64,000 nucleotides of DNA from Selaginella moellendorffii (lineage: Eukaryota > Plantae > Lycopodiophyta): the NCBI RefSeq assembly GCF_000143415.4, contig NW_003314272.1:1150184-1214183 (forward strand), read 5' to 3'. The notes beneath the pieces were generated by a model that worked only from the letters and a program-made list of their open reading frames with translations, was not told the origin of the DNA and made no database searches. Of this stretch, positions 18,065 through 32,968 are shown in pieces; positions within the stretch are counted from its first letter, which is position 1; each line of letters starts with the position of its first letter. The translations under genes and the position numbers were made by a program.

Positions 18065-19147
18065 TTAGAAGTAGAGGAAGCACAGGATCATGACACCGCC
18101 GACGAACAAGAGCAGCCGGGAGAGCAGCGTTTCCTGCTGGTCCGGGCGGAGCGGCGGCGGCAGGGGCCTCAGGTGGTGGTGGTGGTGGTGGTGACTGGCC
18201 GGCGGCGGCGGCGGCGTGTGCAAGCTCCCATACGGCAGCATGGCCGGCCCGGGTGGCGGCGCGTCGGGGAAGCCATGGAACTGGAGCCGGAAGAGCGATG
18301 GAAATAATCCAAATCCCGCGGAGAAAGTCACGTTGCCGAATCGCGCCGACGCTCCCGGCCCCGCGGCAGCTCCAGCCACGAAACCAATGCCGTATGGATC
18401 GTAGAGGCGGCGGGCGTGGTGGTGCCAGGCCGCGAGGCTGGCCTGGTGGTGGGGGTCCGAGGAGGAGCCCGACCTCTGGCCGGGGGGCCGAGATGGGATC
18501 TCCATCTCGGGCACCGAGCTGGTGGCGGGGTCGCGGTGGTCGGAGGAGGACTCCACGCAGCCTCGGCCATAGAGGGGGATGACTTTGTCCTCGTGGACGG
18601 GGGCCTTGCAAACCGGGCACTCCTTGCAGATGGATCGCAGCTGCGTCCACTTGTAGAGGCAGGGCCAGCAGAAGAGGTGGCCGCAGAGGGTGACGACGGG
18701 ATCTTGCGCGAGCTCCAGGCAGATGTTGCAGTCGAAGCTCCCGGCGGCTTGGTCGCGATCGTCGCCCTCGTCGTCCTCGTCGTCTCCATCGTCGCAATCG
18801 CGATCGCGGTCGAGGGTGGTGGAAGCTGTTTTGCTGCTGGCTGGAGGAGGAGGAGGAGGAGGAGGAGGAGGCTTGGTTCTTGATCCACCCGAGGTTCCCG
18901 GATGATCGTCGAGGCCTGGATGATCAGCTCTTACTTGGGCATTGCCTTGTGGATCTTCTTCTTCTTCTTCTTCTTCTTCCTCGCGATCGTGTTCCACTTC
19001 GTCGTCTCGAGCTCGTAGCTCCGCCTGGGACTCACCTGGCTTTGGGCGATCGCGAAGCTCTCCCGATCGATTGGAGGAAGAACTGGAATTGGACACCGCA
19101 GTGCTGCTGCCGCTCGCGTCCTCTGCTCCGGCGGGACTGTTCGTCAT
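18065..19147 (-). CDS. Tail-anchored C3HC4 RING E3 ligase (RMA/RNF5/RNF185 type)
   Basis: FDCNICLELAQDPVVTLCGHLFCWPCLYKW…CPVCKA…VIPLYGRG, IPSRPPGQR and a C-terminal TM. Intronless. Confidence 0.92.
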   Translation of the reverse strand: MTNSPAGAEDASGSSTAVSNSSSSSNRSGELRDRPKPGESQAELRARDDEVEHDREEEEEEEEEDPQGNAQVRADHPGLDDHPGTSGGSRTKPPPPPPPPPPASSKTASTTLDRDRDCDDGDDEDDEGDDRDQAAGSFDCNICLELAQDPVVTLCGHLFCWPCLYKWTQLRSICKECPVCKAPVHEDKVIPLYGRGCVESSSDHRDPATSSVPEMEIPSRPPGQRSGSSSDPHHQASLAAWHHHARRLYDPYGIGFVAGAAAGPGASARFGNVTFSAGFGLFPSLFRLQFHGFPDAPPPGPAMLPYGSLHTPPPPPASHHHHHHHLRPLPPPLRPDQQETLLSRLLLFVGGVMILCFLYF

Positions 19148-19485
19148 CCTCGCCCGCCGCCGCTACCATCGCTAGAGCTTCTCGTCCTCTTCCATCGCCA
19201 CGGCATTCTATCCTTCTTCGTAGATTTTTTTTTCCTTTGCCCCTTCAGCACAAACAGACGCATTTGACTGGCACGTCAGCGCTTGACTTCGCGGCGGTTG
19301 ACCGTGCAATACCGTTTATTTTGTCCAAATTATAGGCATTTCGAATATGCCCCTGGAGAGAGAGAAGGTAGCAATTAGGGTTCATGGTTCTCGCCCAGTG
19401 GCTCGCGATGGTGCTAGGTCGCGGGCCAGCGCCGAAGCGCCGATCGACCAGGTGATTCTGTGAAAGGTCGCGGCTTGGCAGGGCG

Positions 19486-22400
19486 ATGGCGTCGGCGGGC
19501 TTCGTCCTGGGCTGGAAGGGGGACGAGGACGAGGAGGTGGATATTGGCGGGTCGGATGAGGAAGCGCCAGGGATCGAGAGCGCAGGCGCTATTATTCCAG
19601 CAGGGGTCGAGAGCGCAGCCGCGAGGAGGATTCCAGCCGAAGATTTTGAAGCTGAGAGGAACAAGAGCGCGCCGAGTCCGTCGATATTTCGGGGAAATGA
19701 AAGGGAGCTCCCGCTTCCTCCTGGCGGTAAGCAGCGTCTCGAGAATCGTGCTCTTAATGGCGCTCCAAAGCTTGGAATGGAAGCTCAGGATAGTCGAGGC
19801 TGCAAGAAGGAAGCTGGCGCTGCGAGGCGGGCAGAGAATGCTAATGGCACGGCTGCTTCGATCAAAGGCAAGGAGCCAGTGGTGGAAGAGGAAGACGAAA
19901 CCATGGCATTTAAAAAGAGAAAGGTCGAATCTAGCAGCCTCCGGGATCTCAAACGCCGAAAAGACGGAGACTGGAGATCCAGCCAGTGGGTAGCTTGCGT
20001 GCTCTGCAAAAAGTGGCGAAGGTATGGCCAGAGTTTTATTTTTTTTTTCCATCTCTCTCGGCTGTACCAAACTTCTTGTCGGCAGGATTCCATTCGAGCT
20101 GACTGTGGAGAGGAGTACGTGGCACTGCAAGGAAAACGTCTGGAATTCCTCCATTGCAAGTTGCGAATGTCCACAGGTAGTTTGTTGTGCCTAAGATGTG
20201 ATTAAATTCTATGATGTGCAGGAGGAGGCGAGCACCTTTGACAACATGCCTACGATGCGGGTAGATTTCCCAAACACATTATGCATATCGGATGGCGTTT
20301 TACGGAGAACCTCCACGCCTCTGGACAAGTCTGCTGCTCCTGTACCAGATGATATGACCGTCGCAAGCGAGACGATCATCGGCAGCGCTACTGATGCCAC
20401 TGATAGAGCCGCCTCTCCTGCTGAAAACGGTGCCGCCGCTTTGGACGTTTCAAAGTCTGCTCTCAAGACGCTCACCCCTGAAGAAGGTGAAGCTGTAGCG
20501 AACCAAGATGTGAGCCCCTGTCAAGTCTGTGGTTTGGGGGGTCAAACCATGTAAGCTTGATAATTGATTTCTAATCTCGCCTCTAACTTTCAGTTCTTGC
20601 AGCTCCTGCTCTCTAACAGGATGCACGAGTAGATATCACTTTCACTGCTTGGTTCCTCCACTGACTTCTCGTCCTAGTGGAGGGTGGTATTGCAAGAATC
20701 ACAAAGTTGAATCAATATGGCTCTCGAGTGCTGAATGCGGGGATGGTGGTCAGATGTACTACGTGAAGTGGAGAGGTCGTGCTCACCTTTATGATAGCGT
20801 GCTCAGTGAAGCCGTAGTAGCGAAGCTGGCATCGAAGAAGCTGACTCATCTAAAGAGGAATGGAAAGGTATTTGCTTGTTTTTTGGATGCTTCTAAAGTC
20901 TGACATGCAGCATTGCAGTTGCTAGAGTGGCAGCCGAGCTGGACAGTGCCAGAACGAGTCATAGGAATGCGACAAAATGATTCGCAAGAGATAGAATGGC
21001 TTGTGAAATGGACTCAACTCGGTTACGAACAATCCACATGGGAGTCTGCCTCTGCAAGATTTTTATTGGAGGAAAAAGGGCGGCTTTTGATCGATGTGTA
21101 TGAGAAGTGGTGTGAAGTAGCGCGGCTGCGGGCTCGAGCTCCTCAGGCCGACAAGGTAACAATGTTTGCGTTCATACTAATGATAATATTTTCTCTTACA
21201 GGTTTCTGAAAAATGTGCGCGGCTTATAAAGCAACCTTCTTGGCTACAAAGTGTTTCTTTGCAAGACCATCAGCTGGAAATGCTAAACAATCTTCGCGAT
21301 TGCTGGTGTAAGCAGAAAGGAGGCATTGTCTTAAGTAATCCAATCCAGGTACATGGGCTATTTGTGTCCCGGCGTGATTAACTCGTTTTGCAGGAAGAAC
21401 CAGTTCCGGTTGTAGCCTTCTCAATCTCTTTGTGTCGGGAATTCAGAACAAAGGAGCCCATACTGGTGGTGACTTCTCCAGAGATGCTGCCGTTTTGGGA
21501 GAAGAAGCTTAAAGAGTGGACTCTTGATCTCAACGTAGTTATGTACTGTGGCACTCCTAATAGTAGGTACTTCATTCGACAGCATGAGTTCTCTCTGATC
21601 GAAGGCTGCGTCAAGCTACACATCGTGGTAACCACGTTGGATGTTGTGGGCTCGGTAAGCTTCCCCTTTTTATTTTTTAATAACCATTTTCATAATCAAT
21701 GCAGGATGTGGATGTGGACTTTCTTAAAGGGTTTAAGTGGTCCTGTCTATTAATTCATGACTCTCGTCGAGCTCGGAGAAGTATATACAAAAATTTGGCG
21801 AAGGTGTCTTCCAGTTTTTGTTTGCTTTTCTGTCCAGAGCCTTGGAAGGTAGTGTGTGCGTTGTCTCATTGTGTATACTCATTATTTCTTATCGTTCTTT
21901 CAGTGGGATTCCGAAGAGCGTCAACTTATTGCGGAAGTTCTTGGAAAAGATAAAAGCGTTGACTGGAAGGAGCTTGTGGCCTGCCAGCACAATGCTGAAC
22001 CTGTGAATGATCTAAGGGAATATTGGGTTCCGGCGCAAATGTCCCCTGTGCAGGTTCATCAGTATTGTTTGCTCATTGTAAAACACTTCGAGCTTCTGCG
22101 GTCTGGCAATATGTCTCAGGGGGATAATATTCTTCACGAACTTGTTTCTGTTCTTCGAGATGTAAGTTTTTTTATGTAATTATCTTCTGATAATATTCTT
22201 CTGTTTCTAGAGCAGTGTTGTAGTCATCCTTATTTGGTCTCGGAAACTTTGGTAAAATCTATCGGGGAGCTCGTTCCTAAGGGGGAGTGGCTTAATGCGG
22301 GGATAAGAGCGAGTGGCAAATTGGAGCTTATGCACAAGATGCTCTCGCACTTTTATCTGAACAAAAAGAAAACCCTTATCATTGTCCAGGTATCAAAAGT

Positions 22401-25400
22401 TCATCTGCTTGAGTATTGTTTCATAATTTATTTATTTTCTTTTTCAGAACACACGTTCCAAACAGCTCATGAACATTATTGATGATTATCTAAAGCAACA
22501 ATTTGGCTCATATGGACGCATTGAGCGAGGAATGGATGCACAGGTTCGTCAGGCATCTCTCACAAGGTTCAACTCGCAGGACTCTAGCTGTTTTGCACTT
22601 CTTCTCGAGCGCGGTGCTGCTACATCTATTCCAAATCAGCTCACGGCCGTCGACGCGGTTTTTATCTACGACAGCGACTGGAACCCATGGAGTGACACAA
22701 CGTGCATCCGAAAGCTTGGTCTCAACAACGTGACCGTGTATAGACTGTACAGCTGCCTCACTGTGGAGGAAAAGATTCTTGATGGAGCACGGGAGGATGT
22801 GGTGTCAATCGAACGCCAACTTAAGAATTTGAGCTTGAAAGCAATGCAAGAGATGCTTCGTTGGGGTGCGGCGGCTCTACTACAGATGGACGACTGGTGT
22901 ACACAAAATGATGCAGTTACGGATCCAAGGAGAGGATGGAATGGTGCAACGGTCCCAAACGAGATTGGCAAACAACTGTTTTCTCTAGATGACGATGAAG
23001 TGAAGGCTGTTTCTCTTGGCAACCACGGAACACATCTCAGCGACAAAGCTCGAGCGATTTTGTCACACAGAGATGCGTCGTCCAAAGGAGTTCCTCTTTA
23101 TGGTGTATCGTCCAAGGCTTGTGAAGACGGAAATTCGACGGCGGCGGATGAGTTCTGGTCCCCGCTTCTCAAGGGTAAACGCGAAAAGTCGCTCCAGTTA
23201 CAGGGACAAAGAACGCGAAAGCCAGTTGAATATCGAGATTTTGAAGACATATCAAAGAGAAAGAAAAGGAAACTTACGTCACCAAGTTACCTAGCGGCCC
23301 ACGGCGGTAAGATAAGTGTTTTGATGCTTGGGCTAGAATCGTACTCTTTTGTTGTTTATTACAGAGCTACGGCAAGTGGATGCTTCTGATACAGTCCGTC
23401 CGACTCCTGATGCTTCAACCCAGGTAGCAGCACCTCCAGTTTCGCAAAGTTCTGGAGGTCGTGTAACAACTTCGAGCAGCCAACGAGAGGAGCAGCTTGA
23501 GCGTCTCAGCAGTTTGCAGGGAGAGCTGATGTCCCTGGGCGAGTTCATAGAGTTACCAGTAAGCAGTGCTTGGGCTTTAACTGTTTGCAGTTGTCTCACT
23601 CGACTTTCTTTCGTAGGAGAATGTACTAAAGCGCGCGTTGGAATTGCTCACTTTCGTGGTAAAGAACCTGCGGATGAATAATAATTTCCGTCACGAGGTG
23701 GAGTTGTCCTTGGTATGTTCTATATTTAATATTCGTGTTTTTAGCTTCTGAAAGACTTATGCCTTCTTCTTGGCAGTGCTGGATTGCAGCAGAACAGATG
23801 GGCGTTGACTTCGACAAAGTGGTGGCGACTTTAGCGGCAACGAGCGAGGGGTTTAATGTGGACGAGCAGTCGCTGGAGGCTGTTCACAACAAGCTCAAGA
23901 TAGCTTTGGGGGCCTTTCCTGCGTCTCGTTCACAAAACGGACAGTCTCCAACGGTAGCTGCCACGGAAAAAACCCAGCCAGCGGCTGTGTCACCACGGGC
24001 TTCTTTAGATTCTCCTCCCGGGGGATGTCGTGTATCGGTAGAAAAAAGGGACCTGTTGGAAGAAAAAAAGCAGGAACTGAAGACGAGGAGGAAAGCCCAG
24101 ACTCAAAAGCTCCTGAACTCTCAAAAGCGAGTGTGGTGCGAGCTTATGGAGAACGAAACCAAGCAAAAGGTCCACCTTGAGAAGGTTTACGAAGCTGAAT
24201 GCAGAACTATTCAAGCGTTGGGGACGGCTGAGAGTAGCCGGCTGCTAGCAGAGAAAGCCGAGGAACACAAGTTACGGGTGAAAGAACTTCAGACGCGGCT
24301 AGATAAGGAGAGAAGGGAATTGGGAGAGAGACAAACGTTCACGAGGAACAGGATGGGCGCGTTCTTTGCTGATCGGCTAAAGCAGCTGGACAACGGTGTT
24401 ATGCCAATTGATACTACTCCGGCAACCGACAATACCGCTGAATTGCGGGAATGTCAACCTGAAAGTTCCGCCAACTTTAGCCACAAGGAACAGCAACTTC
24501 CGCGAGAAAGCGATGATCTCGGGCGTGGAAATTCTCGTGGTGTCCGTCAACAGCAATCTCCATGTGAGCAGCAAGCAGATCCTCCCATGATCCAGAGTGA
24601 AGACACTCCTGCTCGACCGCGAGTTTCTTCCGTTTCTATGACCACTGCGGAAGCCTCGCATCCTGTGCTTCCTGAAGCCCCCGTTCCAGCTCCTGAAATT
24701 GGTTCTAGCACAAGAGAAGAAGTCTCCGTTCCTGCTATCAGAAGTAAAGTAACTCAAGTTTATGCGAGCAGAAGCGAAGAAGTTCCAGTTCCGAACGTTC
24801 CTGCGAGCAGAAGACAAGAAGTTCAGCCTCCAAGCATTCCAGCGAGCAGGACAACTTCCATTGCTGCGAGCCGAAGAGAGGTAGTTCCGCTTACACGGGA
24901 CGCTGCTATTGCTGCGAGCGGAAGAGAAGAAGTTCCAGTTACACGGGATGTTTCTATTGCTGCGAGCGGAAGAGCAGAAGCTCCGGCTGTTCCGGCTCCT
25001 GCGAGCAGAAGGGAAGAAGCCCCTCTTCCTGCGAGAACAGTAGAGGAAGTTCCACTTGCAAGTGACGTCGTCCCACCGCCAGCCAGCAGAAGCCAAGTCC
25101 CACCCGAGATCCCAGCGAGTAGAAGCCAGCAAGGACCAGCGACCGGGAGCCGAGCCGCAGTCGTTATTGCGTTACCAGCCAGCAGAGGCCAGGAAGAATT
25201 TCCACGTACTACTAGTGGTCGGGCCAACGAAATCTTTGCAGGGAACAGAAGTCAAGTTGTCGTTGCGCTTCCTGCAACGGGTCAGATTCATGCTGAAGCT
25301 CCTCTTCCTCTTGGCCAGAGTCCGCGGGTTCCACAGCAGCCGGTTTCCAACTTTGTGCCGCCAGCGCGCCTGTCTTCGCACTACGATCCACTGTCGCTGG

Positions 25401-26426
25401 AGGAGACGAGGCTGCAGAAAGAGATGGAGAAGATCAAGAAGGCGCGCGACGACGAGGTTGGTTTCATCAGCCTTTCTTTGCTCAACTTCCTCGTATTTGA
25501 GTTCAGGTGGCAAGGCTTTCGAAAGAACTGGAGGCGTTGAAACGGAAGCTCGAGGACGAGTGCAAAGCGTTCGCCCAGAAGGCGGAAGCGTTACAAGGCA
25601 ACCTTGCAGCGGTGGCTGCCCAACGCCGCTTATCCGAGGCGCTAAGGCTGAAAGACAGCGTGCGCCTCAAAGGTACTATTTCATTTCTCCCTGTTTCTTT
25701 ACAGCCATGCGTGGTTTCTCAGGATCTCCCGGACCGCCAGCTCCGGCAAGCGTGTGGCACAACTCCGTCATGGACTTCGCCGCCATCGCGGGCGCCAACT
25801 CGCGGCCGCAAGCTCTGGCCGGCTCCTCCTCTCCAATGGCCGCGATCTACAACACGCAGCATGGGATACTCAGAGTCCCAGGGCAGCACTTTGGCCAGCA
25901 GCAGCATCCTCAGCAGGTGATGGTCTTCCCGCCGCCATCGCCAACCAACGCGACACGAGCTCCAGATCTCCTCCGGCCAATCTCTCCCAGCTTCGCCACC
26001 CCATCAACGCAGCAGACGCATCACCATACGAGGCTCCAGTTCGTGCCAGTCTCAGCTTCTACGATGATGATGACGAGTCCAGCAGTAGCACCGCCTTCTC
26101 CCACGGTGGTGGCCACGACTCAAGAGCTCATGAACGCCCGCGTCAGCTCGCAGGTAATGTACAGGAACATAAGCGAGAACCTGCGGCTGTCCTGGTTGAA
26201 CCAGGCTCACACAGGGACAGGCGGCGGCGGCGGTAGCTTTAGTAACACAGGAGTAGTACCAGCTGCCGCGGCCACTGACGTAGCTGTGGATCACGCGGCT
26301 CAAGCTAGCGCCAGTTCTGTAGCACGAGTTCTAGCCGGAGGCAACGCATTTATCGCCCAGCACCCTCTGGACTCCCGGGTGAGCTTGGGACACGCTGACT
26401 ACATCTGCTTATCAGACGAGGAGTAG
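19486..26426 (+). CDS. MOM1: MOM1 transcriptional silencing factor (CW, PHD, two chromodomains, degenerate SNF2, CMM1-3)
   Basis: PHD CQVC…YHFHCLVPPL…GWYC; chromodomains YYVKWRGRAHLYD and WLVKWTQLGYEQSTWE; SNF2-like ASGKLELM and YDSDWNP; CMM1 …VELSL|CWIAA; CMM2 DPLSLEETRLQKE…LSEALRLK; CMM3 DYICLSDEE*. Confidence 0.88.
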
Positions 26427-26613: not shown

Positions 26614-29460
26614 TCAGTCTCCAGTGATCATGGCGTCTGCGTCCCTGTTTGCTGCAGCCATGGCTTCTACGTCGACAAACTCGGTTGGATCTTGCTGTGC
26701 TACTCCTGCTGCTGATGATGGCGGCGATGAGCCATGCTGACTCCAAGCTGCCTGTTCTTGCGGTGTTTGTTCTTGTTGTCCGGCTTGGACAACGCCTTGC
26801 TGGTTCCAGGAAGCGTGAGCGTGAGCTTCCCACGGCGCTGGAATGGGACGAGTTGCCGGAGGGAGGAGCTCCATGTACGAAGGCATTGCTGGATCGGCCG
26901 CTAGAGAGCCACTGCCGTTGAGAACTCTGGGACTGGACAGGGAGCCGCTCTTGCTGTACACGAGCTCCGTCCTGCCGGCAGAGTAGATGGCGGACGTCGT
27001 AGTTTCCGGGAGTCTCAGCTCGATTCCAAAGCCGCCGCCGCCGCTACCGTTTCCACCACCGCTGCCTCCGCCATCTTGCTCCATCCCGCCAGGCGAGCCG
27101 TTTTCGTAGCACCCCGGTGGCAGCTCGCCAACGCCGACGCCGCCACCTTCAAATGCGTCCTTTTTCTGCCTCTTCCACCGCTTGGTCGACGAAGTACCGT
27201 CGTCCTCAAAGTCCTCTTCGCTCCTCTCCGTGTGGAGGTAGAGCCAGAGCTTCCTCTCGCCGTCGTAGCGTACGCACGGATCTCTCTCGTAGTGAAGCCT
27301 GTCCAAGGCACCACTCACCACCTGGTGAACTTGAGCCTCGGAAACGTCCTCGACAACGAACTGTGAGTCCCGGATCAATGCACACACGTCCGCCCGTGTC
27401 CCCACGCCACCAGGAAGCCGAGCAGCAGCGTCCCTCACCAGGCACAGAATCGTGACGTGCGGAGGCCGGTCCGGCTTGAGCATGGAATGGTCCCTGGCTT
27501 TGGAGTTCGGCTTTCCCCCGCCTCTTCTCAAAGGAGCCACCACCGACTTTTGCCCGTCCGAGCGCGTGTAAGCAAACGCCCGGTCTGGTACCGAGTAGCG
27601 AAGTATTTCCTCCTTCCGGAAGTAGGACCTCATGTCTTCCGAGCTCGGCGCGATGGTTATCAGACTCTTCTGCGCTCGCATGTCCCTGAATCTCTCCCTC
27701 TCGTCCACGGCCGCCGAGGCAACCGGAGGCGGCGGAAGTTGCAACTGGACCATTTGCTGCCGAGTTTCTTCGCCGTGCTTGTACCACGTCGCAAACGCTT
27801 CTTCCAGCTTCGAAAGGATCTTGGACGGTACACCCCAGTCGTCCGCCAGCATGTTGCCAGACTCGTCCACAGATCCCTGGGGGCCGATCCAGTACCAAGA
27901 CTTCGACTCCTTCTCGTAAGTCGTGAGCGGCTTCCACCCCTTGGCTCCGGCAGGAGCAATCTTGGATGATAGGACTTTCAATGCTCCCCACGCTAAGTCT
28001 TGCAGTGGCTCCTGAGCCTGGAGGACTTTTCGATCCCCTGGATTTTCCTGCACTCTGCTGACAACCTCCGAGAAGGGAACGCAGAAAAAACCAGCTTTTG
28101 CTGCGCCATCGTCACTGCCGTTGTCATCAGTCGGACTCGACGGGCCACTGCTGGCATTCTTTGATAACGCTGCGTCAACGTTGGGGCCACTGTCCTTGGC
28201 CGGCGTCAGCAAAGCTCGCCTCAGAGCCGACAGGAACAAGATGATCGAAAATGGGAAGGTGACTCCCAGTTTCTTGATAACCTTCGACGGTGGTGGAGAT
28301 TCCGAAACCTCTTTCTCAGCCGCCACCTTTTTCTTCGTCTTCTTCTTCTGCTCTGCCTCCTCGTTCCCTGGCTCGGCCTTCGCCACTCCAACGTCCACAA
28401 GAGCTTGCATTCTCTGCTTTCCCACACTGGAAGCCTTCTTGTCACTATCTTCCGAGCTCGTCATACTCTCATCCTCCCTGGTCCGCTTGGCCACCGAAGC
28501 CCTCTCCACATTCGACTTCCTCTTCTTCTCGCCACTCGTCAGCGAGGAGCTTGTATTCCCGCCACCACCACCACTGTCATTTCCAAAGGCCTCCGGATCA
28601 TCCGAGACTGGAGACGCCGCGTTCTCAGCCTTCCCAGGAACAGACTTCTTCACAACACCACCTTTGGAGGCAGCTCTCCCAGCCTTTGCTAAGCCCGGCT
28701 TAGCTACAGCTCCCTTCGCTACCATCCTCGTGTTCCCATGCACGGCTTCAGCCACTGGCTCGGCAGCCTTGCTCTTCAACGCATCCTTCACTGTCTCGGG
28801 CATCTTCGCCTTCTGGACAGCCTTGAAAGTCTTCTCAGCCACCTTTGGGAGCTGCGGCTTCACCTTGGTGTCCTTCCACTTCCTCCAAATCTCTAGCCTC
28901 CCCTCGATCTCCACGTCCGGATACTCCTCCCACAGCTTTTGCATCTCCACGAACGAGCTCACCATGGAATTGTGGTACTTTCTCAGCAGCTGGTAGTGCT
29001 CTTTCCTCTGGAGACACTTAATCCCGTCCGAGTACTGCACCACATTGGGCTGGCAATGTCCTCCTTTCAAGCTCTCGAACAACTGGGCCATTGGATTCCC
29101 GAAGAAGATATTGCTAGTGCCCGAGAGAAGCTCCTTGAGCGTCGTCGCAAATGCCTCCTGGTCGATCTCCGGGGGCATGAAAGCCATGAGCTGCTCCCTC
29201 TCCTCCTCGGACAAGTAGAAATTCCAAGTCTCCAGGGACAAAATGTTCTTCAAGTCGGGAAGATCAAACAGCTCGAATGGGAAGCTGGCGATGGATTCCC
29301 CGACCTGGCAAGTCTCCATACCCTTGTCCGAGAGCTCCGATTCCGTAGAAACCTCCGAATCCTCGAGCTTCACCGCCAGCATTCTCCGGGGCGCAGCGGC
29401 GCCGGCATCGCTCGACGATCTAGCACCGCCAGCCCTGTGATTGTTGGCGAGAATCGCCAT
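26614..29460 (-). CDS. NFRKB: NFRKB-like INO80 complex subunit
   Basis: 948-aa intronless ORF. DEUBAD-like ILSLETWNFYLSEEEREQLMAFMP. Winged-helix region ARDHSMLKPDRPPHVTILCLVRDAAARLPGGVGTRADVCALIRDSQF…SGALDRLHYERDPCV. Confidence 0.9.
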   Translation of the reverse strand: MAILANNHRAGGARSSSDAGAAAPRRMLAVKLEDSEVSTESELSDKGMETCQVGESIASFPFELFDLPDLKNILSLETWNFYLSEEEREQLMAFMPPEIDQEAFATTLKELLSGTSNIFFGNPMAQLFESLKGGHCQPNVVQYSDGIKCLQRKEHYQLLRKYHNSMVSSFVEMQKLWEEYPDVEIEGRLEIWRKWKDTKVKPQLPKVAEKTFKAVQKAKMPETVKDALKSKAAEPVAEAVHGNTRMVAKGAVAKPGLAKAGRAASKGGVVKKSVPGKAENAASPVSDDPEAFGNDSGGGGGNTSSSLTSGEKKRKSNVERASVAKRTREDESMTSSEDSDKKASSVGKQRMQALVDVGVAKAEPGNEEAEQKKKTKKKVAAEKEVSESPPPSKVIKKLGVTFPFSIILFLSALRRALLTPAKDSGPNVDAALSKNASSGPSSPTDDNGSDDGAAKAGFFCVPFSEVVSRVQENPGDRKVLQAQEPLQDLAWGALKVLSSKIAPAGAKGWKPLTTYEKESKSWYWIGPQGSVDESGNMLADDWGVPSKILSKLEEAFATWYKHGEETRQQMVQLQLPPPPVASAAVDERERFRDMRAQKSLITIAPSSEDMRSYFRKEEILRYSVPDRAFAYTRSDGQKSVVAPLRRGGGKPNSKARDHSMLKPDRPPHVTILCLVRDAAARLPGGVGTRADVCALIRDSQFVVEDVSEAQVHQVVSGALDRLHYERDPCVRYDGERKLWLYLHTERSEEDFEDDGTSSTKRWKRQKKDAFEGGGVGVGELPPGCYENGSPGGMEQDGGGSGGGNGSGGGGFGIELRLPETTTSAIYSAGRTELVYSKSGSLSSPRVLNGSGSLAADPAMPSYMELLPPATRPIPAPWEAHAHASWNQQGVVQAGQQEQTPQEQAAWSQHGSSPPSSAAGVAQQDPTEFVDVEAMAAANRDADAMITGD

Positions 29461-29658
29461 TTTCTCTACATCTACCTGAGCTCCACTCGCCTCCTCGATT
29501 TCTCCACTGGAGCCCTAGCTCCTAACGAACCGGGTTAGGGCTTGAGCGCCCAAAGGAATGATGACGTGGCGCTCGCCAGGCCGTTGGATAGGCCACTCCT
29601 TCTCCCTCCTCCCGGAAAGATCTTCCGCGAATGGTGCAAGCCTTCTTCCTCCTCCCGG

Positions 29659-31275
29659 ATGATTAGAACAGAGTCCAAGAGAAAGAGGAAGCTCGCCAGC
29701 GGCGCTGCCAGCAATCTCGAGTGGATTCTCGCCGCAAACGCCAATCGACAGCCCGATCTCGACACCGCTAGCTGCGCCGACCTCATCGCGGCCTGTGGAG
29801 CGGCCAGAGATCTCAATCGCGGCAAGCGCATCCGCGATTCCATCATCCAGAGGAGCCCAGCGCTGCGAGAATGCGCCTACCTCTCTACCCGCCTGATCGA
29901 GATGTTTGGGCAGTGCGAGAGCGTGGAGGACGCGCGCAGAGCTTTCGACTCCATGGCTGGCCGGGACAAATACTCGTGGAACGCGCTCCTCCAGGCATAT
30001 GCCCGGAATGGGCATCTGGAGAGCGCCAAGAATCTCTTCGACCGGATGCCACACAGGGATATTTACACGTGGACGGCGATGATGAACGCATCCGCGCAAT
30101 CCGGACAGCTTCAGCTATCCACATTTCTTTTCAACCAGATGCCGTCCAGGGACATCGTTCCATGGACGGTGTTTATCACTGCACTTGCCAAGACCTGGGA
30201 TATTCCTCGAGCTGGGGAATTACACCAAAAGATGCCCCAATGGAGCATTTTCTCTTCCACAGCGCTAATCTCTGCATACACGGAGAAGGGTTACGTTTCC
30301 CAAGCTAGAGAAATTTTTGATACTATGCCATACAAGACCGTCGTAACATGGAACGCTATGGTAACAGCCTATGCCGCAAACGGGCATATTGTTGACGCTA
30401 AGTGGGTGTTTGACAGTGCCACGGAGAGGAACGTAGTGACGTGGACTGTCCTCGTGGCGGGACTTGCCGAGTTTGGCCATGCTGACGAGGCTGCCCGGAT
30501 GCTGGAAAAAATGCCACGTAGAGACACCGTGACTTGGAATGCCGTGATGGCAGCATTTGCCCGCCAAGGGCATTTAGATGAAGCACAGAAACTATTTGAA
30601 AAGATACCCGAGAAGAACACTGCGTCTTACAATGAGGTTCTGGCAGCATTGATCGAGCAAAACCGGATGGACGAGGCGAAGAGATTGCTCGAGAGGATCC
30701 CAGATCCAGACGTGATCTCATGGACGACGCTGCTAGCAGGATTTGCCCGGTTGGGGCATCTGGGCGAAGCTCAAGCTCTCTTCGATCGGATGCCGCTACA
30801 AAACGTGGTTTCGTGGACTACCATGGTCGCGGCCTATGCCAGAAACGATCGCGCAAGCGACGCAGTGGAGATCTTCCAGTCTATGGATCTGGAAGGGATC
30901 AAACACGACGAGGTAACGTTCTTGGACATCCTCACGGCGTGCGCGCATCTCGGCCTCGTCGATCATACCCGGTTCTTCTTCCTGTCAATGTGCCAGAACC
31001 GAGGCATCGATCCGCTGCTCCACCACTACCTCTGCGTTGTGGACGCTCTCTCTCGCGCCGGGAGGCTGGGAGAGGCCGAGGAGCTTCTCTGGAGCATGCC
31101 TTTCGAGCCCGAGACCGAGGCGTGGACAACACTGCTGGGAGCTTGCCGGATCCACGGCGACGCCAATTGTGGAGCTCGGATCGGGCTTCTGATCCTCGAG
31201 CTCAATCGCGATCGAGAAGCCCATCGAGGAGCACCTTACATGCTCCTGTTTGGAATCCATGCCGAGGGAACGTAA
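29659..31275 (+). CDS. PLS-class PPR protein with truncated E domain
   Basis: Tandem 31-aa motifs (SWNALLQAYARNGHLESAKNLFDRMP). Ends HYLCVVDALSRAG…WTTLLGACRIH…APYMLL*. No DYW domain. Confidence 0.9.
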   Translation: MIRTESKRKRKLASGAASNLEWILAANANRQPDLDTASCADLIAACGAARDLNRGKRIRDSIIQRSPALRECAYLSTRLIEMFGQCESVEDARRAFDSMAGRDKYSWNALLQAYARNGHLESAKNLFDRMPHRDIYTWTAMMNASAQSGQLQLSTFLFNQMPSRDIVPWTVFITALAKTWDIPRAGELHQKMPQWSIFSSTALISAYTEKGYVSQAREIFDTMPYKTVVTWNAMVTAYAANGHIVDAKWVFDSATERNVVTWTVLVAGLAEFGHADEAARMLEKMPRRDTVTWNAVMAAFARQGHLDEAQKLFEKIPEKNTASYNEVLAALIEQNRMDEAKRLLERIPDPDVISWTTLLAGFARLGHLGEAQALFDRMPLQNVVSWTTMVAAYARNDRASDAVEIFQSMDLEGIKHDEVTFLDILTACAHLGLVDHTRFFFLSMCQNRGIDPLLHHYLCVVDALSRAGRLGEAEELLWSMPFEPETEAWTTLLGACRIHGDANCGARIGLLILELNRDREAHRGAPYMLLFGIHAEGT

Positions 31276-31284
31276 CCCGGATCA

Positions 31285-32712
31285 TCAAAAGGTGGCGGTC
31301 TTGGTTCCTCCATAGATGTTGGAGAGAAGAACATAGCTTGGAGCACAGCCAGGATCCAGCGCCAGTATGATTGTCTCAATCCTTGCCGCGCGCTTGGAGT
31401 CCCGGTGGATCTTGCAACCCGCTAGGAGCGTCGTCCAGGTGATGATCTGGGGGACGAAGGGCATGGAGTTGACGAGCTCCTCAGCAGCGTCCATTCTCCC
31501 AGCACGCCCAAGAACGTCGATCACGCAGTGGTAGTGCTCCAGGATTGGGGTCACGCCGCGGTCCAGGATCATCCACAGGAACTGCTGGACGCTCTCCTTG
31601 ACGAGCCCCGTGTGGCTATGCGCCGTGAGGACGCTCACGTATGTGATCTCGTTGGGCCGCGACGATCCATCCTGCTCCATGACCTTGAAGAGATCGAGAG
31701 CTGCAAGGAACTCGCCGCTCTGGACGTATGCCGCCAGCATCGCGTTCCAGGAGATAACGTTACGATCGGGCATGGAATCGAAGAGCTTCCGAGCTTGCAG
31801 CAAATGCCCCTTTTGAGCATACGCTGCAAAGATCACGGTCCAGGAGACCACATTGCGATCTCGCATTGTATCAAAGAGGTTCTTAGCCTGTTCCAAGTTT
31901 TGGGTGTTGACATAGAGCTGGATCATGGAATTCACAGCTTGGAGGTCCTGTTCCGGCATTTCAAGAAAGAGGTTTTGTGCTTGTAGACAATGCCCACACT
32001 GGGCAAATGCGGTGACCATAATTGTCCAAGCTATCACAGTTCTTCCCGGCATGGCATCGAAAATTCGCTTAGACTCCTCTACTCTCCTGTGCTGCGCATG
32101 GATCTGGAGGAGCGCCGTCCAGGAGATCGAATTCCTCTCGCCCATGATCTCAAACAGCGCTCGCGCCTCGCCAAGATGCCCATTTTGGGCAAATCCCACC
32201 ATCATCGTCGTCCACGACGCCCCATCCTGATAAGGCATTCGCTCAAACACCGCCACAGCCTCTAGGGTTCTTCCAGTGCCCATGAATGCCGCGCACAGCG
32301 CGTTCCACGACACGAGATTCCGGCGCTCCATGCTCGCGAAGAGGCGGCGCGATTCCCCCAGGCGGCCTCGCTGGGCATTGGCCGTGATGAGCGAGTTCCA
32401 CGACACCAGATCCCTGTCGGGCGAGCTCTCCAGCATCTCGTGCGCGCGATCGAGGTCGCCGTTGATCGCGTAGGCGTGCGTGATGATGTTCCAGGAGAAT
32501 CGATTGGGCGGCGCGATGCCGTCGAACACCATGCGCGCCTCGTCCACGCTGCCGCACCGGCTGTACATCTCGATGAGGAGATTCGCGAGGTAGCGATTGG
32601 CGTGGTGCTCGCCCTGCCGGATCCGTGCGTGGAGCTTCCGCCCCTCGGCGATGTCCTTGGCCCTGCCGCAGATCTTGACAAGCTCCGCCAGGGACTGCAC
32701 GATTCTCCCCAT
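31285..32712 (-). CDS. PLS-class PPR protein with truncated E domain
   Basis: Tandem PPR motifs. Ends EHYHCVIDVLGRAG…WTTLLAGCKIH…SYVLLSNIY. No DYW domain. Confidence 0.9.
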   Translation of the reverse strand: MGRIVQSLAELVKICGRAKDIAEGRKLHARIRQGEHHANRYLANLLIEMYSRCGSVDEARMVFDGIAPPNRFSWNIITHAYAINGDLDRAHEMLESSPDRDLVSWNSLITANAQRGRLGESRRLFASMERRNLVSWNALCAAFMGTGRTLEAVAVFERMPYQDGASWTTMMVGFAQNGHLGEARALFEIMGERNSISWTALLQIHAQHRRVEESKRIFDAMPGRTVIAWTIMVTAFAQCGHCLQAQNLFLEMPEQDLQAVNSMIQLYVNTQNLEQAKNLFDTMRDRNVVSWTVIFAAYAQKGHLLQARKLFDSMPDRNVISWNAMLAAYVQSGEFLAALDLFKVMEQDGSSRPNEITYVSVLTAHSHTGLVKESVQQFLWMILDRGVTPILEHYHCVIDVLGRAGRMDAAEELVNSMPFVPQIITWTTLLAGCKIHRDSKRAARIETIILALDPGCAPSYVLLSNIYGGTKTATF

Positions 32713-32968
32713 TGCTCGCCATGCTCCCCAAGAACACCAAACGAATCTGGGCCGTCTATTCTCAAGAACACCGCGAATCCGAGCCGTCCATTTTGAAAGG
32801 AAGGGGCCGAGCACCATGGAAAAAGCCCTAGAAGCGGGAGACTAGCTCACGGCCGGCATGGAGGTAACGCGTCGTATTCTCGTTCTTTGCAGGGTGAGGG
32901 TGATCTCCCACTATTCCAGCACAGTGCTTCCAGGATTCCATGATCGATCTTCTTTCTTCTCATCCGCC

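What the first reader, a model, noticed from the sequence alone, without database searches (positions are those of the whole stretch)
19984..20230. Hidden CW-type zinc finger at the N-terminus of MOM1
Seen: removing the introns at 20022-20085 and ~20177-20221 gives WVACVLCKKWRRIPFELTVERSTWHCKENVWNSSIASCECPQEE. This matches the zf-CW pattern (W-V-x-C-x2-C-x-K-W-R…W-x-C-x2-N…S-C-x2-P-Q-E) with all four Cys and the cage Trp residues. Known: CW domains read methylated H3K4; MOM1 derives from CHD3 and retains PHD/chromodomains in some plants. I know of no description of a CW domain in MOM1. Inference: this MOM1 has four histone-reader modules and may sense H3K4 methylation directly. The domain is invisible in the ORF track because it is split across exons.
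Basis: partly seen in the sequence, partly recalled or inferred. Interest (0 to 1): 0.78.

Follow-up and report, generated by a model that had tools for sequence, protein, structure and literature searches.

The report
CW zinc finger on spikemoss MOM1
The spikemoss (Selaginella moellendorffii) version of the plant gene-silencing protein MOM1 carries a real, expressed CW-type zinc finger, a module that reads methylated histone H3 in other proteins; a clubmoss relative shares it, all other MOM1 relatives examined lack it, the public protein record already lists it, and what it binds is untested.

Summary
Window 19984-20230 (+) encodes a complete zf-CW domain split by two GT..AG introns (20022-20085 and 20177-20221).

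- **Transcript evidence:** Spliced contigs from four runs in four studies cover the region. All four remove the first intron exactly and three remove the second. One 3.1-kb contig runs from the CW exons through the PHD, both chromodomains and the helicase exons.
- **Identity:** The gene is Selaginella moellendorffii MOMa (SmMOM1), public protein XP_024529348.1.
- **Domain score:** Pfam zf-CW scores 37.6 bits (E 2e-9, full model, cut-off 27.5). All four zinc cysteines and the three signature tryptophans are present.
- **Family:** The protein is a true MOM-clade member. It has CMM1, CMM2 and CMM3, and it sits in the MOM clade of the tree. Its SNF2 ATPase motifs are all destroyed.
- **Distribution:** Among the best 150 relatives, only the Diphasiastrum complanatum homologue also has a CW, followed there by a PWWP. 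Liverwort and seed-plant MOMs have none, so a gain in lycophytes is the simplest reading.

Methyl-H3K4 reading is plausible but untested. No paper found links MOM1 with a CW domain, but automatic Pfam annotation of the public record already carries it. This scan reached the same verdict on the other haplotype (s1-334509). It is a modest novelty: an undescribed domain-architecture variant of a known family.

The parts
19486..26426 (+). Coding region of Selaginella moellendorffii MOMa / SmMOM1 (16 exons, 2046 aa; ATG 19486, stop 26424-26426)
   Evidence: Thirteen introns between 20022 and 23776 are confirmed by spliced contigs. The last two introns (25457-25506, 25673-25722) follow the public model P0152 laid on the window by tblastn and the sequence read.
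19984..20021 (+). CW part 1 (end of exon 1): QWVACVLCKKWR. Pocket Trp W168 (19987-19989), Zn Cys C171 (19996-19998) and C174 (20005-20007), pocket Trp W177 (20014-20016).
20022..20085 (+). Intron 1, 64 nt, GT..AG, phase 2, inside the CW domain
   Evidence: Removed in contigs of X1, X2, X11 and X12
20086..20176 (+). CW part 2 (exon 2, 91 nt): (R)IPFELTVERSTWHCKENVWNSSIASCECPQ. Core Trp W191 (20120-20122), Zn Cys C193 (20126-20128) and C205 (20162-20164).
   Evidence: Pfam zf-CW positions 23-45, 21.4 bits; alignment to MORC3 CW
20177..20221 (+). Intron 2, 45 nt, GT..AG, phase 0, at the C-terminal edge of the CW domain
   Evidence: Removed in contigs of X1, X2 and X11
20222..20230 (+). CW part 3: the first codons of exon 3 (EEA). 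The Pfam envelope ends at residue 211. The same exon continues to 20550 and carries the first half of the PHD finger.
20519..20696 (+). PHD finger (residues 309-350), split by intron 20551-20602
   Evidence: Pfam PHD 25.2 bits; 23.4 bits on exon 4 alone; junction
20706..21053 (+). Tandem chromodomains (first 20706-20822, weak; second 20946-21053), with intron 20868-20918 between them
   Evidence: Pfam Chromo 19.4 and 38.3 bits exon by exon; 45.6 bits in P0152
21229..22819 (+). Degenerate SNF2 ATPase (residues 496-938). Motifs I, II, III and VI are all lost.
   Evidence: Weak Pfam SNF2-rel 31.9 and Helicase_C 24.8 bits; alignment with active CHDs
23487..23968 (+). CMM1 / Pfam MOM1-like domain (residues 1142-1261), spanning introns 23559-23616 and 23713-23776
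   Evidence: PF25029 68.2 bits, E 7.8e-19; exon 14 alone 21.6 bits
25382..25659 (+). CMM2-like coiled coil (residues 1733-1808), with intron 25457-25506
   Evidence: Local phmmer to the C-terminal coiled coil of other MOM proteins: E 2.6e-12 (P0015), 2.8e-10 (Taxus), 4.6e-10 (Adiantum)
26400..26423 (+). CMM3-like C-terminal motif YICLSDEE
   Evidence: The same [VI][VI][CY]LSDD[DE] end occurs in Marchantia, fern, Taxus and angiosperm MOMs

Best explanation
Shown:
- Residues 167-211 of the S. moellendorffii MOM1 orthologue (MOMa) form a genuine, transcribed CW-type zinc finger encoded across three exons.
- It sits N-terminal to a PHD finger, two chromodomains, a catalytically dead SNF2 ATPase and the MOM-specific CMM1, CMM2 and CMM3 motifs.
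- The finger keeps the four zinc-binding cysteines (C171, C174, C193, C205), the two tryptophans that wall the methyl-lysine pocket in known CW domains (W168, W177) and the core tryptophan (W191).

Inferred:
- It binds the N-terminal tail of histone H3 in a K4-methylation-sensitive way.
- That binding helps to place, or gates as in MORC3, a non-enzymatic MOM scaffold on chromatin, alongside the PHD and chromodomains.
- The module was most likely added in the lycophyte lineage. Selaginella and Diphasiastrum MOM-clade proteins share it, while liverwort and seed-plant MOMs lack it.
For: - **Sequence and splice sites:**
- **Transcripts:** both introns are removed in spliced contigs. One contig runs from 19412 to 23033 across the CW, PHD, chromodomain and helicase exons.
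- **Domain score:** Pfam zf-CW 37.6 bits, E 2.2e-9, full length, on the public protein of this haplotype; 36.1 bits on the other haplotype.
- **Solved relatives:** MORC3 and ASHH2 CW domains are hit at E 6e-6 and 1.5e-4, with Cys and Trp columns aligned.
- **Residue roles from the literature:** four Cys bind Zn, two Trp form the pocket and the third Trp is core (PMC9043364). MORC2 lacks one cage Trp and does not bind histones, and the MORC3 CW releases autoinhibition on binding H3K4me3 (PMC7596504).
- **Conservation:** the Diphasiastrum homologue P0005 has a CW 54% identical over 48 aa, with the same Cys and Trp residues. The Selaginella and Diphasiastrum lineages split early in lycophyte history (general knowledge).
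- **MOM membership:** CMM1 68 bits, CMM2, CMM3, dead ATPase motifs, and a MOM clade with support 100.
Against: - No binding experiment exists.
- The C-terminal element that closes the pocket in known CW domains (Trp303 in ZCWPW1, Glu453 in MORC3, the alpha1 helix in ASHH2) has no clear counterpart. By ungapped extension of the MORC3 alignment, Glu453 falls on Ala212, although E210 and E211 lie beside it. Specificity, and even binding itself, therefore remain open.
- The single-sequence AlphaFold model was unusable (pLDDT 53), so the fold rests on sequence evidence only.
- The case for a lycophyte gain rests on two lycophyte proteins. It also rests on N-termini of gene models elsewhere that may be incomplete: only 65 of the 150 relatives have 400 or more residues before the ATPase.
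Confidence: 0.6

Rival explanations
1. The CW finger is folded and conserved but does not read methyl-lysine. It would instead dock within the molecule on the dead ATPase, bind DNA (as the MORC4 CW does) or bind a partner protein. It would then be a structural or regulatory module, as in MORC2.
For: Known CW domains differ widely in function (PMC7596504). The pocket-closing C-terminal element cannot be identified here. MOM1 silencing in Arabidopsis needs only CMM2, and the PHD and chromodomains are dispensable there (PMC2507757).
Against: CW domains that fail to bind histones are reported to lack a cage tryptophan (MORC2). Here both cage tryptophans are kept in Selaginella and in Diphasiastrum.
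Confidence: 0.3
2. The CW finger is ancestral to vascular-plant MOM1 rather than a lycophyte gain. It would survive in angiosperm MOM1 as a cage-less Cys4 relic, the conserved motif G-T-C-x2-C-S-K-R-x-R-V-x-Y-D-S...E-L-C-S-C.
For: The motif lies about 300 aa upstream of the ATPase, the same relative place as the Selaginella CW. hhalign of the motif against the lycophyte CW gives probability 79% and E 1.6e-5. The reciprocal local HMM hits the lycophyte CW at E 0.015-0.03.
Against: Only 16 columns align. Pfam zf-CW finds nothing in 10 such segments at E up to 10. The motif profile finds no CW domain in the PDB. No CxxC lies upstream of the PHD in P0015, Marchantia, Riccia or Victoria, so several losses would be needed.
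Confidence: 0.15
3. The pattern is a chance match, or the CW exons belong to a separate transcript from MOM1.
For: None found.
Against: Pfam E 2e-9. The third CW piece and the first half of the PHD share one exon. One contig spans the CW through the helicase exons, and both junctions appear in runs from three independent studies.
Confidence: 0.02

Closest known systems
CW domains of human MORC3 (PDB 5SVI, 4QQ4) and Arabidopsis ASHH2/SDG8 (PDB 6QXZ, 5YVX)
   Same: The Cys4 zinc site and spacing are the same, and so are the three signature tryptophans. An acidic stretch follows the fourth Cys (CPQEE here, EVPEEP in MORC3). Sequence E-values are 6e-6 and 1.5e-4.
   Different: The host protein is a dead SNF2 scaffold, not a GHKL ATPase or a SET methyltransferase. 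There is no ASHH2-type alpha1 helix and no assignable counterpart of MORC3 Glu453. Binding is untested.
Arabidopsis MOM1 and the MOM clade of CHD subfamily II (Caikovski 2008, PMC2507757; the 2022 GBE paper on CHD diversification, PMC9113485)
   Same: CMM1 (PF25029), the CMM2 coiled coil, the CMM3 C-terminal LSDD/EE motif, a degenerate ATPase, and a PHD plus tandem chromodomains as in most non-Brassicales MOMs.
   Different: It carries an extra N-terminal CW finger that neither paper mentions. It was absent from the other 148 of the best 150 relatives, of which about 65 have enough N-terminal sequence to tell, including liverworts and angiosperms.
Diphasiastrum complanatum KAJ7544078.1 (P0005)
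   Same: It is a MOM-clade pseudo-ATPase with a closely similar CW (54% identity), a shared N-terminal 25-aa motif, a PHD and chromodomains.
   Different: Its CW is followed by a PWWP domain, a ZCWPW1-like cassette. It has a second PHD-like finger and a weak DUF1087 match. The 104-kb gene model is cut short at the C-terminus: only a partial CMM1 and no CMM3.
Animal ZCWPW1 (zf-CW + PWWP dual reader of H3K4me3 and H3K36me3)
   Same: It combines a CW with a second histone-reader module. The Diphasiastrum relative has exactly the CW-PWWP order.
   Different: The rest of the protein is unrelated. Selaginella has no PWWP after its CW.

Membership tests
zf-CW (Pfam PF07496) | Full-length match to the family HMM above the gathering score | tested here: met
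   P0152 residues 167-211, profile 1-47/47, 37.6 bits against cut-off 27.5, E 2.2e-9. Exon pieces score 7.7 and 21.4 bits and are collinear.
zf-CW (Pfam PF07496) | Four conserved zinc-binding cysteines | tested here: met
   C171, C174, C193 and C205 align with the MORC3 cysteines. Definition from PMC9043364.
zf-CW (Pfam PF07496) | Three conserved tryptophans: two form the pocket and one is in the core | tested here: met
   W168, W177 and W191 align with the MORC3 tryptophans and are conserved in Diphasiastrum.
zf-CW (Pfam PF07496) | C-terminal element that completes the methyl-lysine pocket | tested here: inconclusive
   Acidic residues E210 and E211 lie next to the position of MORC3 Glu453, but there is no exact counterpart.
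zf-CW (Pfam PF07496) | CW fold (a beta-hairpin around the zinc) | tested here: inconclusive
   Single-sequence AlphaFold2 model with mean pLDDT 53; not usable.
zf-CW (Pfam PF07496) | Binding of methylated H3K4 peptides | not testable with these tools
   Needs ITC, NMR or a peptide array.
MOM1 clade (CHD subfamily II) | CMM1 / MOM1-like domain | tested here: met
   PF25029 at 1142-1261, 68.2 bits.
MOM1 clade (CHD subfamily II) | CMM2 coiled coil | tested here: met
   Residues 1716-1815 hit the equivalent region of MOM proteins at E 2.6e-12 to 1e-5, sharing DPL..E..R..KE and RRLAEAFRLK. There is no direct PDB hit to the AtMOM1 CMM2.
MOM1 clade (CHD subfamily II) | CMM3 C-terminal motif | tested here: met
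   YICLSDEE here against VICLSDDD, VVCLSDDD and VIYLSDDD elsewhere.
MOM1 clade (CHD subfamily II) | Placement inside the MOM clade on an ATPase-region tree | tested here: met
   The MOM clade has support 100 against the Walker-A-positive PKR1/CHD rows. Selaginella lies inside it on a long branch (quick IQ-TREE search).
MOM1 clade (CHD subfamily II) | Transcriptional silencing activity | not testable with these tools
   Needs genetics.
Active CHD3/Mi-2 remodeller | Intact Walker A (GxGKT), DExH, motif III and the motif VI arginines | tested here: not met
   DEMGLGKT becomes S--NPIQEEP, DEGH becomes HDSR, LLTGTP becomes LLFCPEP, and motif VI is lost.
Active CHD3/Mi-2 remodeller | PHD plus tandem chromodomains N-terminal to the ATPase | tested here: met

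The most novel reading that the evidence does not exclude
The CW finger was already present on the MOM protein of the first vascular plants as a methyl-H3K4 sensor. Lycophytes kept it intact. In angiosperms it decayed into the conserved, cage-less Cys4 motif (C-x2-C-S-K-R-x-R...C-S-C) that sits at the same place in MOM1. If so, MOM1 began as a histone-mark-guided factor and later became mark-independent.
Probability: 0.15. Interest if true: 0.55.

Novelty: new variant of a known kind. Interest (0 to 1): 0.36.

Why it matters
MOM1 is a puzzling plant silencer: it acts largely without changing DNA or histone marks, and how it is guided to chromatin is only partly understood.

An early-diverging vascular plant keeps MOM1 with a full set of reader modules: CW, PHD and two chromodomains. 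These sit on a catalytically dead remodeller. That points to an ancestral mode of recruitment through histone marks. It also gives a simple, testable handle: peptide binding by a 60-residue domain.

The value is comparative and moderate. The domain is of a well-known type, it is already present in automatic annotation of the public record, and so far it is confined to lycophytes.

Tried and rejected
- **Exon 2 alone against the PDB:** no hit. At 30 aa it is too short.
- **Word-indexed protein searches:** the CW region of P0001, the CW+PWWP region of P0005 and residues 150-520 of P0152 found no further CW-bearing relatives. These searches are limited by length and by word matching, so the blanks mean little.
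- **CMM2 region against the PDB:** no hit to the Arabidopsis MOM1 CMM2. CMM2 was shown by local phmmer instead.
- **AlphaFold2 of the CW without an alignment:** pLDDT 53, discarded, and no fold search was run.
- **CW-relic idea for the angiosperm Cys4 motif:** the hhalign result is suggestive, but Pfam, the PDB profile search and the taxon pattern do not back it. It is kept only as a low-probability lead.
- Exons were searched one by one by reference. The spliced protein was tested through the public records P0152 and P0001, which match the exons.
Full report
**What is in the sequence.**
Reading 19500-21000 on the + strand shows an open frame from ATG 19486 that ends an exon at 20021 with ...SSQWVACVLCKKWR plus two bases.
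- A 64-nt GT..AG intron follows (20022-20085).
- A 91-nt exon (20086-20176) completes the Arg codon and encodes IPFELTVERSTWHCKENVWNSSIASCECPQ.
- A 45-nt GT..AG intron follows (20177-20221).
- The next exon begins EEASTFDN at 20222 and continues without a stop to 20550, where it carries the first half of a PHD finger (SPCQVCGLGGQT).

The last piece of the CW and the start of the PHD finger lie on one exon.

**Is it more than chance?**
- Pfam on the exons: the exon 1 tail matches zf-CW profile positions 1-12 (7.7 bits). Exon 2 matches positions 23-45 of 47 (21.4 bits, E 2.5e-4). The matches are in the right order.
- An exhaustive HMMER search with the helicase exon 22448-23305 returned the public protein of the other haplotype, P0001 (XP_024520221.1, 98% identical). 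Its cluster also holds P0152 (XP_024529348.1) and P0151 (EFJ29853.1, UniProt name 'MOMa'), all from Selaginella moellendorffii.
- tblastn of these proteins on the window shows that the window is the P0152/P0151 haplotype. Exon 1 is 100% identical, and exon 11 begins at residue 815, as my exon arithmetic predicts.
- Pfam on P0152 by id gives zf-CW at 167-211, full profile 1-47/47, 37.6 bits, E 2.2e-9, against a gathering score of 27.5. P0001 gives 36.1 bits.
- A PDB sequence search with P0001:160-222 finds the CW domains of MORC3 (E 5.9e-6) and ASHH2 (E 1.5e-4), with the cysteine and tryptophan columns aligned.

**Is it expressed and joined to the rest of the gene?**
Contigs of four public runs from four studies were laid on 19100-24900.
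- All 13 introns between 20022 and 23776 are removed at GT..AG borders, so these are transcript assemblies.
- The 64-nt CW intron is removed in all four runs and the 45-nt intron in three. In the fourth run the contig ends there.
- One 3102-nt contig (X2, record 10) runs from 19412 to 23033 across the CW, PHD, both chromodomains and the helicase exons.
- The rival 'separate transcript' is refuted.

**What gene is it?**
Pfam on P0152 finds these domains:

| Domain | Residues | Bits |
|---|---|---|
| zf-CW | 167-211 | 37.6 |
| PHD | 309-350 | 25.2 |
| Chromo | 417-452 | 45.6 |
| SNF2-rel_dom | 509-646 | 31.9 |
| Helicase_C | 791-895 | 24.8 |
| MOM1-like domain PF25029 (CMM1) | 1142-1261 | 68.2 |

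- **CMM2:** the coiled coil at 1716-1815 matches the equivalent C-terminal region of other MOM proteins. E-values are 2.6e-12 (P0015), 2.8e-10 (Taxus), 4.6e-10 (Adiantum) and about 1e-5 for many angiosperms. The shared motifs are DPL..E..R..KE and RRLAEAFRLK.
- **CMM3:** the protein ends in YICLSDEE. Marchantia, fern, Taxus and angiosperm MOMs end in [VI][VI][CY]LSDD[DE].
- **Dead ATPase:** in an alignment with active CHDs, motif I DEMGLGKT reads S--NPIQEEP, motif II DEGH reads HDSR, motif III LLTGTP reads LLFCPEP, and the motif VI arginines are gone.
- **Tree:** on a tree of the ATPase region (83 rows, 449 columns, quick IQ-TREE search), all 76 rows that lack GxGKT form one clade (support 100) against the Walker-A-positive PKR1/CHD rows. 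Selaginella lies inside it on a long branch.
- **Literature identity:** this is the SmMOM1 of Caikovski et al. 2008 (PMC2507757), who drew a PHD, chromodomains and an 'N-terminal homology region' for MOM1 homologues but no CW. The 2022 survey of CHD proteins (PMC9113485) lists PHD, chromodomains, ATPase, CMM1 and CMM2 for the MOM clade. The words CW and PWWP do not occur in its text.

**Who else has the CW?**
- Among the best 150 representatives of the exhaustive search, a permissive CW pattern and a local HMM find the finger only in the Selaginella protein and in P0005.
- P0005 is KAJ7544078.1 from the clubmoss Diphasiastrum complanatum. Pfam finds zf-CW 694-737 (40.2 bits), PWWP 796-882, PHD, chromodomains, SNF2 (72 bits), Helicase_C and a weak DUF1087.
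- Its CW is 54% identical to the Selaginella CW over 48 residues, with the same Cys and Trp residues. Its Walker A is lost in the MOM manner, and it sits at the unresolved base of the MOM clade.
- Its gene model spans 104 kb and is cut short at the C-terminus.
- The liverwort MOMs (Marchantia P0166, Riccia P0128) have PHD, chromodomains, SNF2, Helicase_C, DUF1087 and CMM1 but no CW.
- No seed-plant MOM has a CW. About 65 of the 150 proteins have at least 400 residues before the ATPase and are therefore informative.
- One gain in the lycophyte stem explains this with fewer steps than an older origin with losses, but the sample of non-seed plants is thin.

**How it most likely works.**
- Literature definition: the four cysteines bind zinc, two of the three tryptophans form the pi-cation pocket for methylated H3K4, and the third is in the core. 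A variable C-terminal element closes the pocket and sets the preference for me1, me2 or me3 (PMC9043364).
- MORC2, which lacks one cage tryptophan, does not bind histones. The MORC3 CW releases autoinhibition of its ATPase when it binds H3K4me3 (PMC7596504).
- Here C171, C174, C193, C205, W168, W177 and W191 are all in place, and they are conserved between two lycophyte lineages.
- I therefore think it most likely (about 55-60%) that the finger binds the H3 tail in a K4-methylation-sensitive way and helps to place or gate a non-enzymatic MOM scaffold, next to the PHD and chromodomains.
- Presence, expression, conservation and the key residues are shown. Binding, specificity and any regulatory docking are inferred.
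- The pocket-closing element cannot be assigned: MORC3 Glu453 falls on Ala212 by ungapped extension, with E210 and E211 beside it. The single-sequence AlphaFold model was too poor to use (pLDDT 53).

**A side lead.**
- Angiosperm MOM1 proteins share a Cys4 motif, G-T-C-x2-C-S-K-R-x-R-V-x-Y-D-S...E-L-C-S-C (alignment A1). It lies about 300 residues before the ATPase, the same relative place as the Selaginella CW.
- hhalign against the lycophyte CW gives 79% probability over only 16 columns.
- Against this, Pfam zf-CW does not see the motif, the motif profile finds no CW in the PDB, and P0015, the liverworts and Victoria have no CxxC before the PHD.
- I keep a 'decayed CW' reading at about 15%.

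**Novelty.**
- Three full-text searches found no paper that holds both MOM1 and a CW term. A 2026 review of plant H3K4me readers names only SDG8-type CW domains.
- The public protein records already contain the spliced domain, and the precomputed Pfam list for the record includes PF07496.
- This scan reached the same verdict on the other haplotype (s1-334509). I re-derived each point independently here.
- It is an undescribed domain-architecture variant of a known family, of moderate comparative interest.

Noticed in passing
related proteins, alignment A1 (e.g. P0032:328-385, P0007:314-373, P0010:402-455, P0047:391-422): Angiosperm MOM1 proteins share a conserved Cys4 motif (G-T-C-x2-C-S-K-R-x-R-V-x-Y-D-S...E-L-C-S-C) about 300 aa upstream of the ATPase. 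Lineages that lost the PHD and chromodomains still keep it. It shows a short local similarity to the first half of the lycophyte CW (hhalign 79%, 16 columns). It may be the 'N-terminal homology region' of Caikovski 2008; this was not checked against Arabidopsis MOM1.
   Followed up: partly
window 21229-22819 and the 76 MOM-clade rows: No MOM-clade representative, liverworts included, has a canonical Walker A GxGKT; liverworts still keep DEGH. Published descriptions speak of 'complete' or 'full-length' SNF2 domains in poplar and rice MOMs. The domain may be full length yet catalytically dead across the whole clade.
   Followed up: partly
P0005 (Diphasiastrum complanatum KAJ7544078.1) residues 694-882: The clubmoss MOM-clade protein carries a CW immediately followed by a PWWP. 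This is the same two-reader cassette as animal ZCWPW1. Its gene spans about 104 kb, and the annotated C-terminus looks wrong: CMM1 is only partial and there is no LSDD end.
   Followed up: partly
window 19486-19563 (residues 1-25): The extreme N-terminal motif MASAGFVLGWKGDEDEEVDIGGSDE is shared with the Diphasiastrum (64% identity), Riccia and Marchantia MOM proteins. It is a small conserved element of unknown role.
   Followed up: no
window 20134: Run X11 (organism B) reads C instead of A. This changes Glu195 to Asp inside the CW (KEN to KDN), the residue that Diphasiastrum has at this position.
   Followed up: no
window 18065-19147 (-): A RING-finger ORF ([28 protein letters not shown]) lies head to head with the MOM gene. 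Only about 340 bp separate the two start codons, so they may share a bidirectional promoter.
   Followed up: no
window 26614-29460 (-), 29542-31275 (+), 31285-32817 (-): A 948-aa intron-free ORF converges on the MOM 3' end with under 200 bp between the two stop codons. Two pentatricopeptide-repeat-like ORFs follow it.
   Followed up: no
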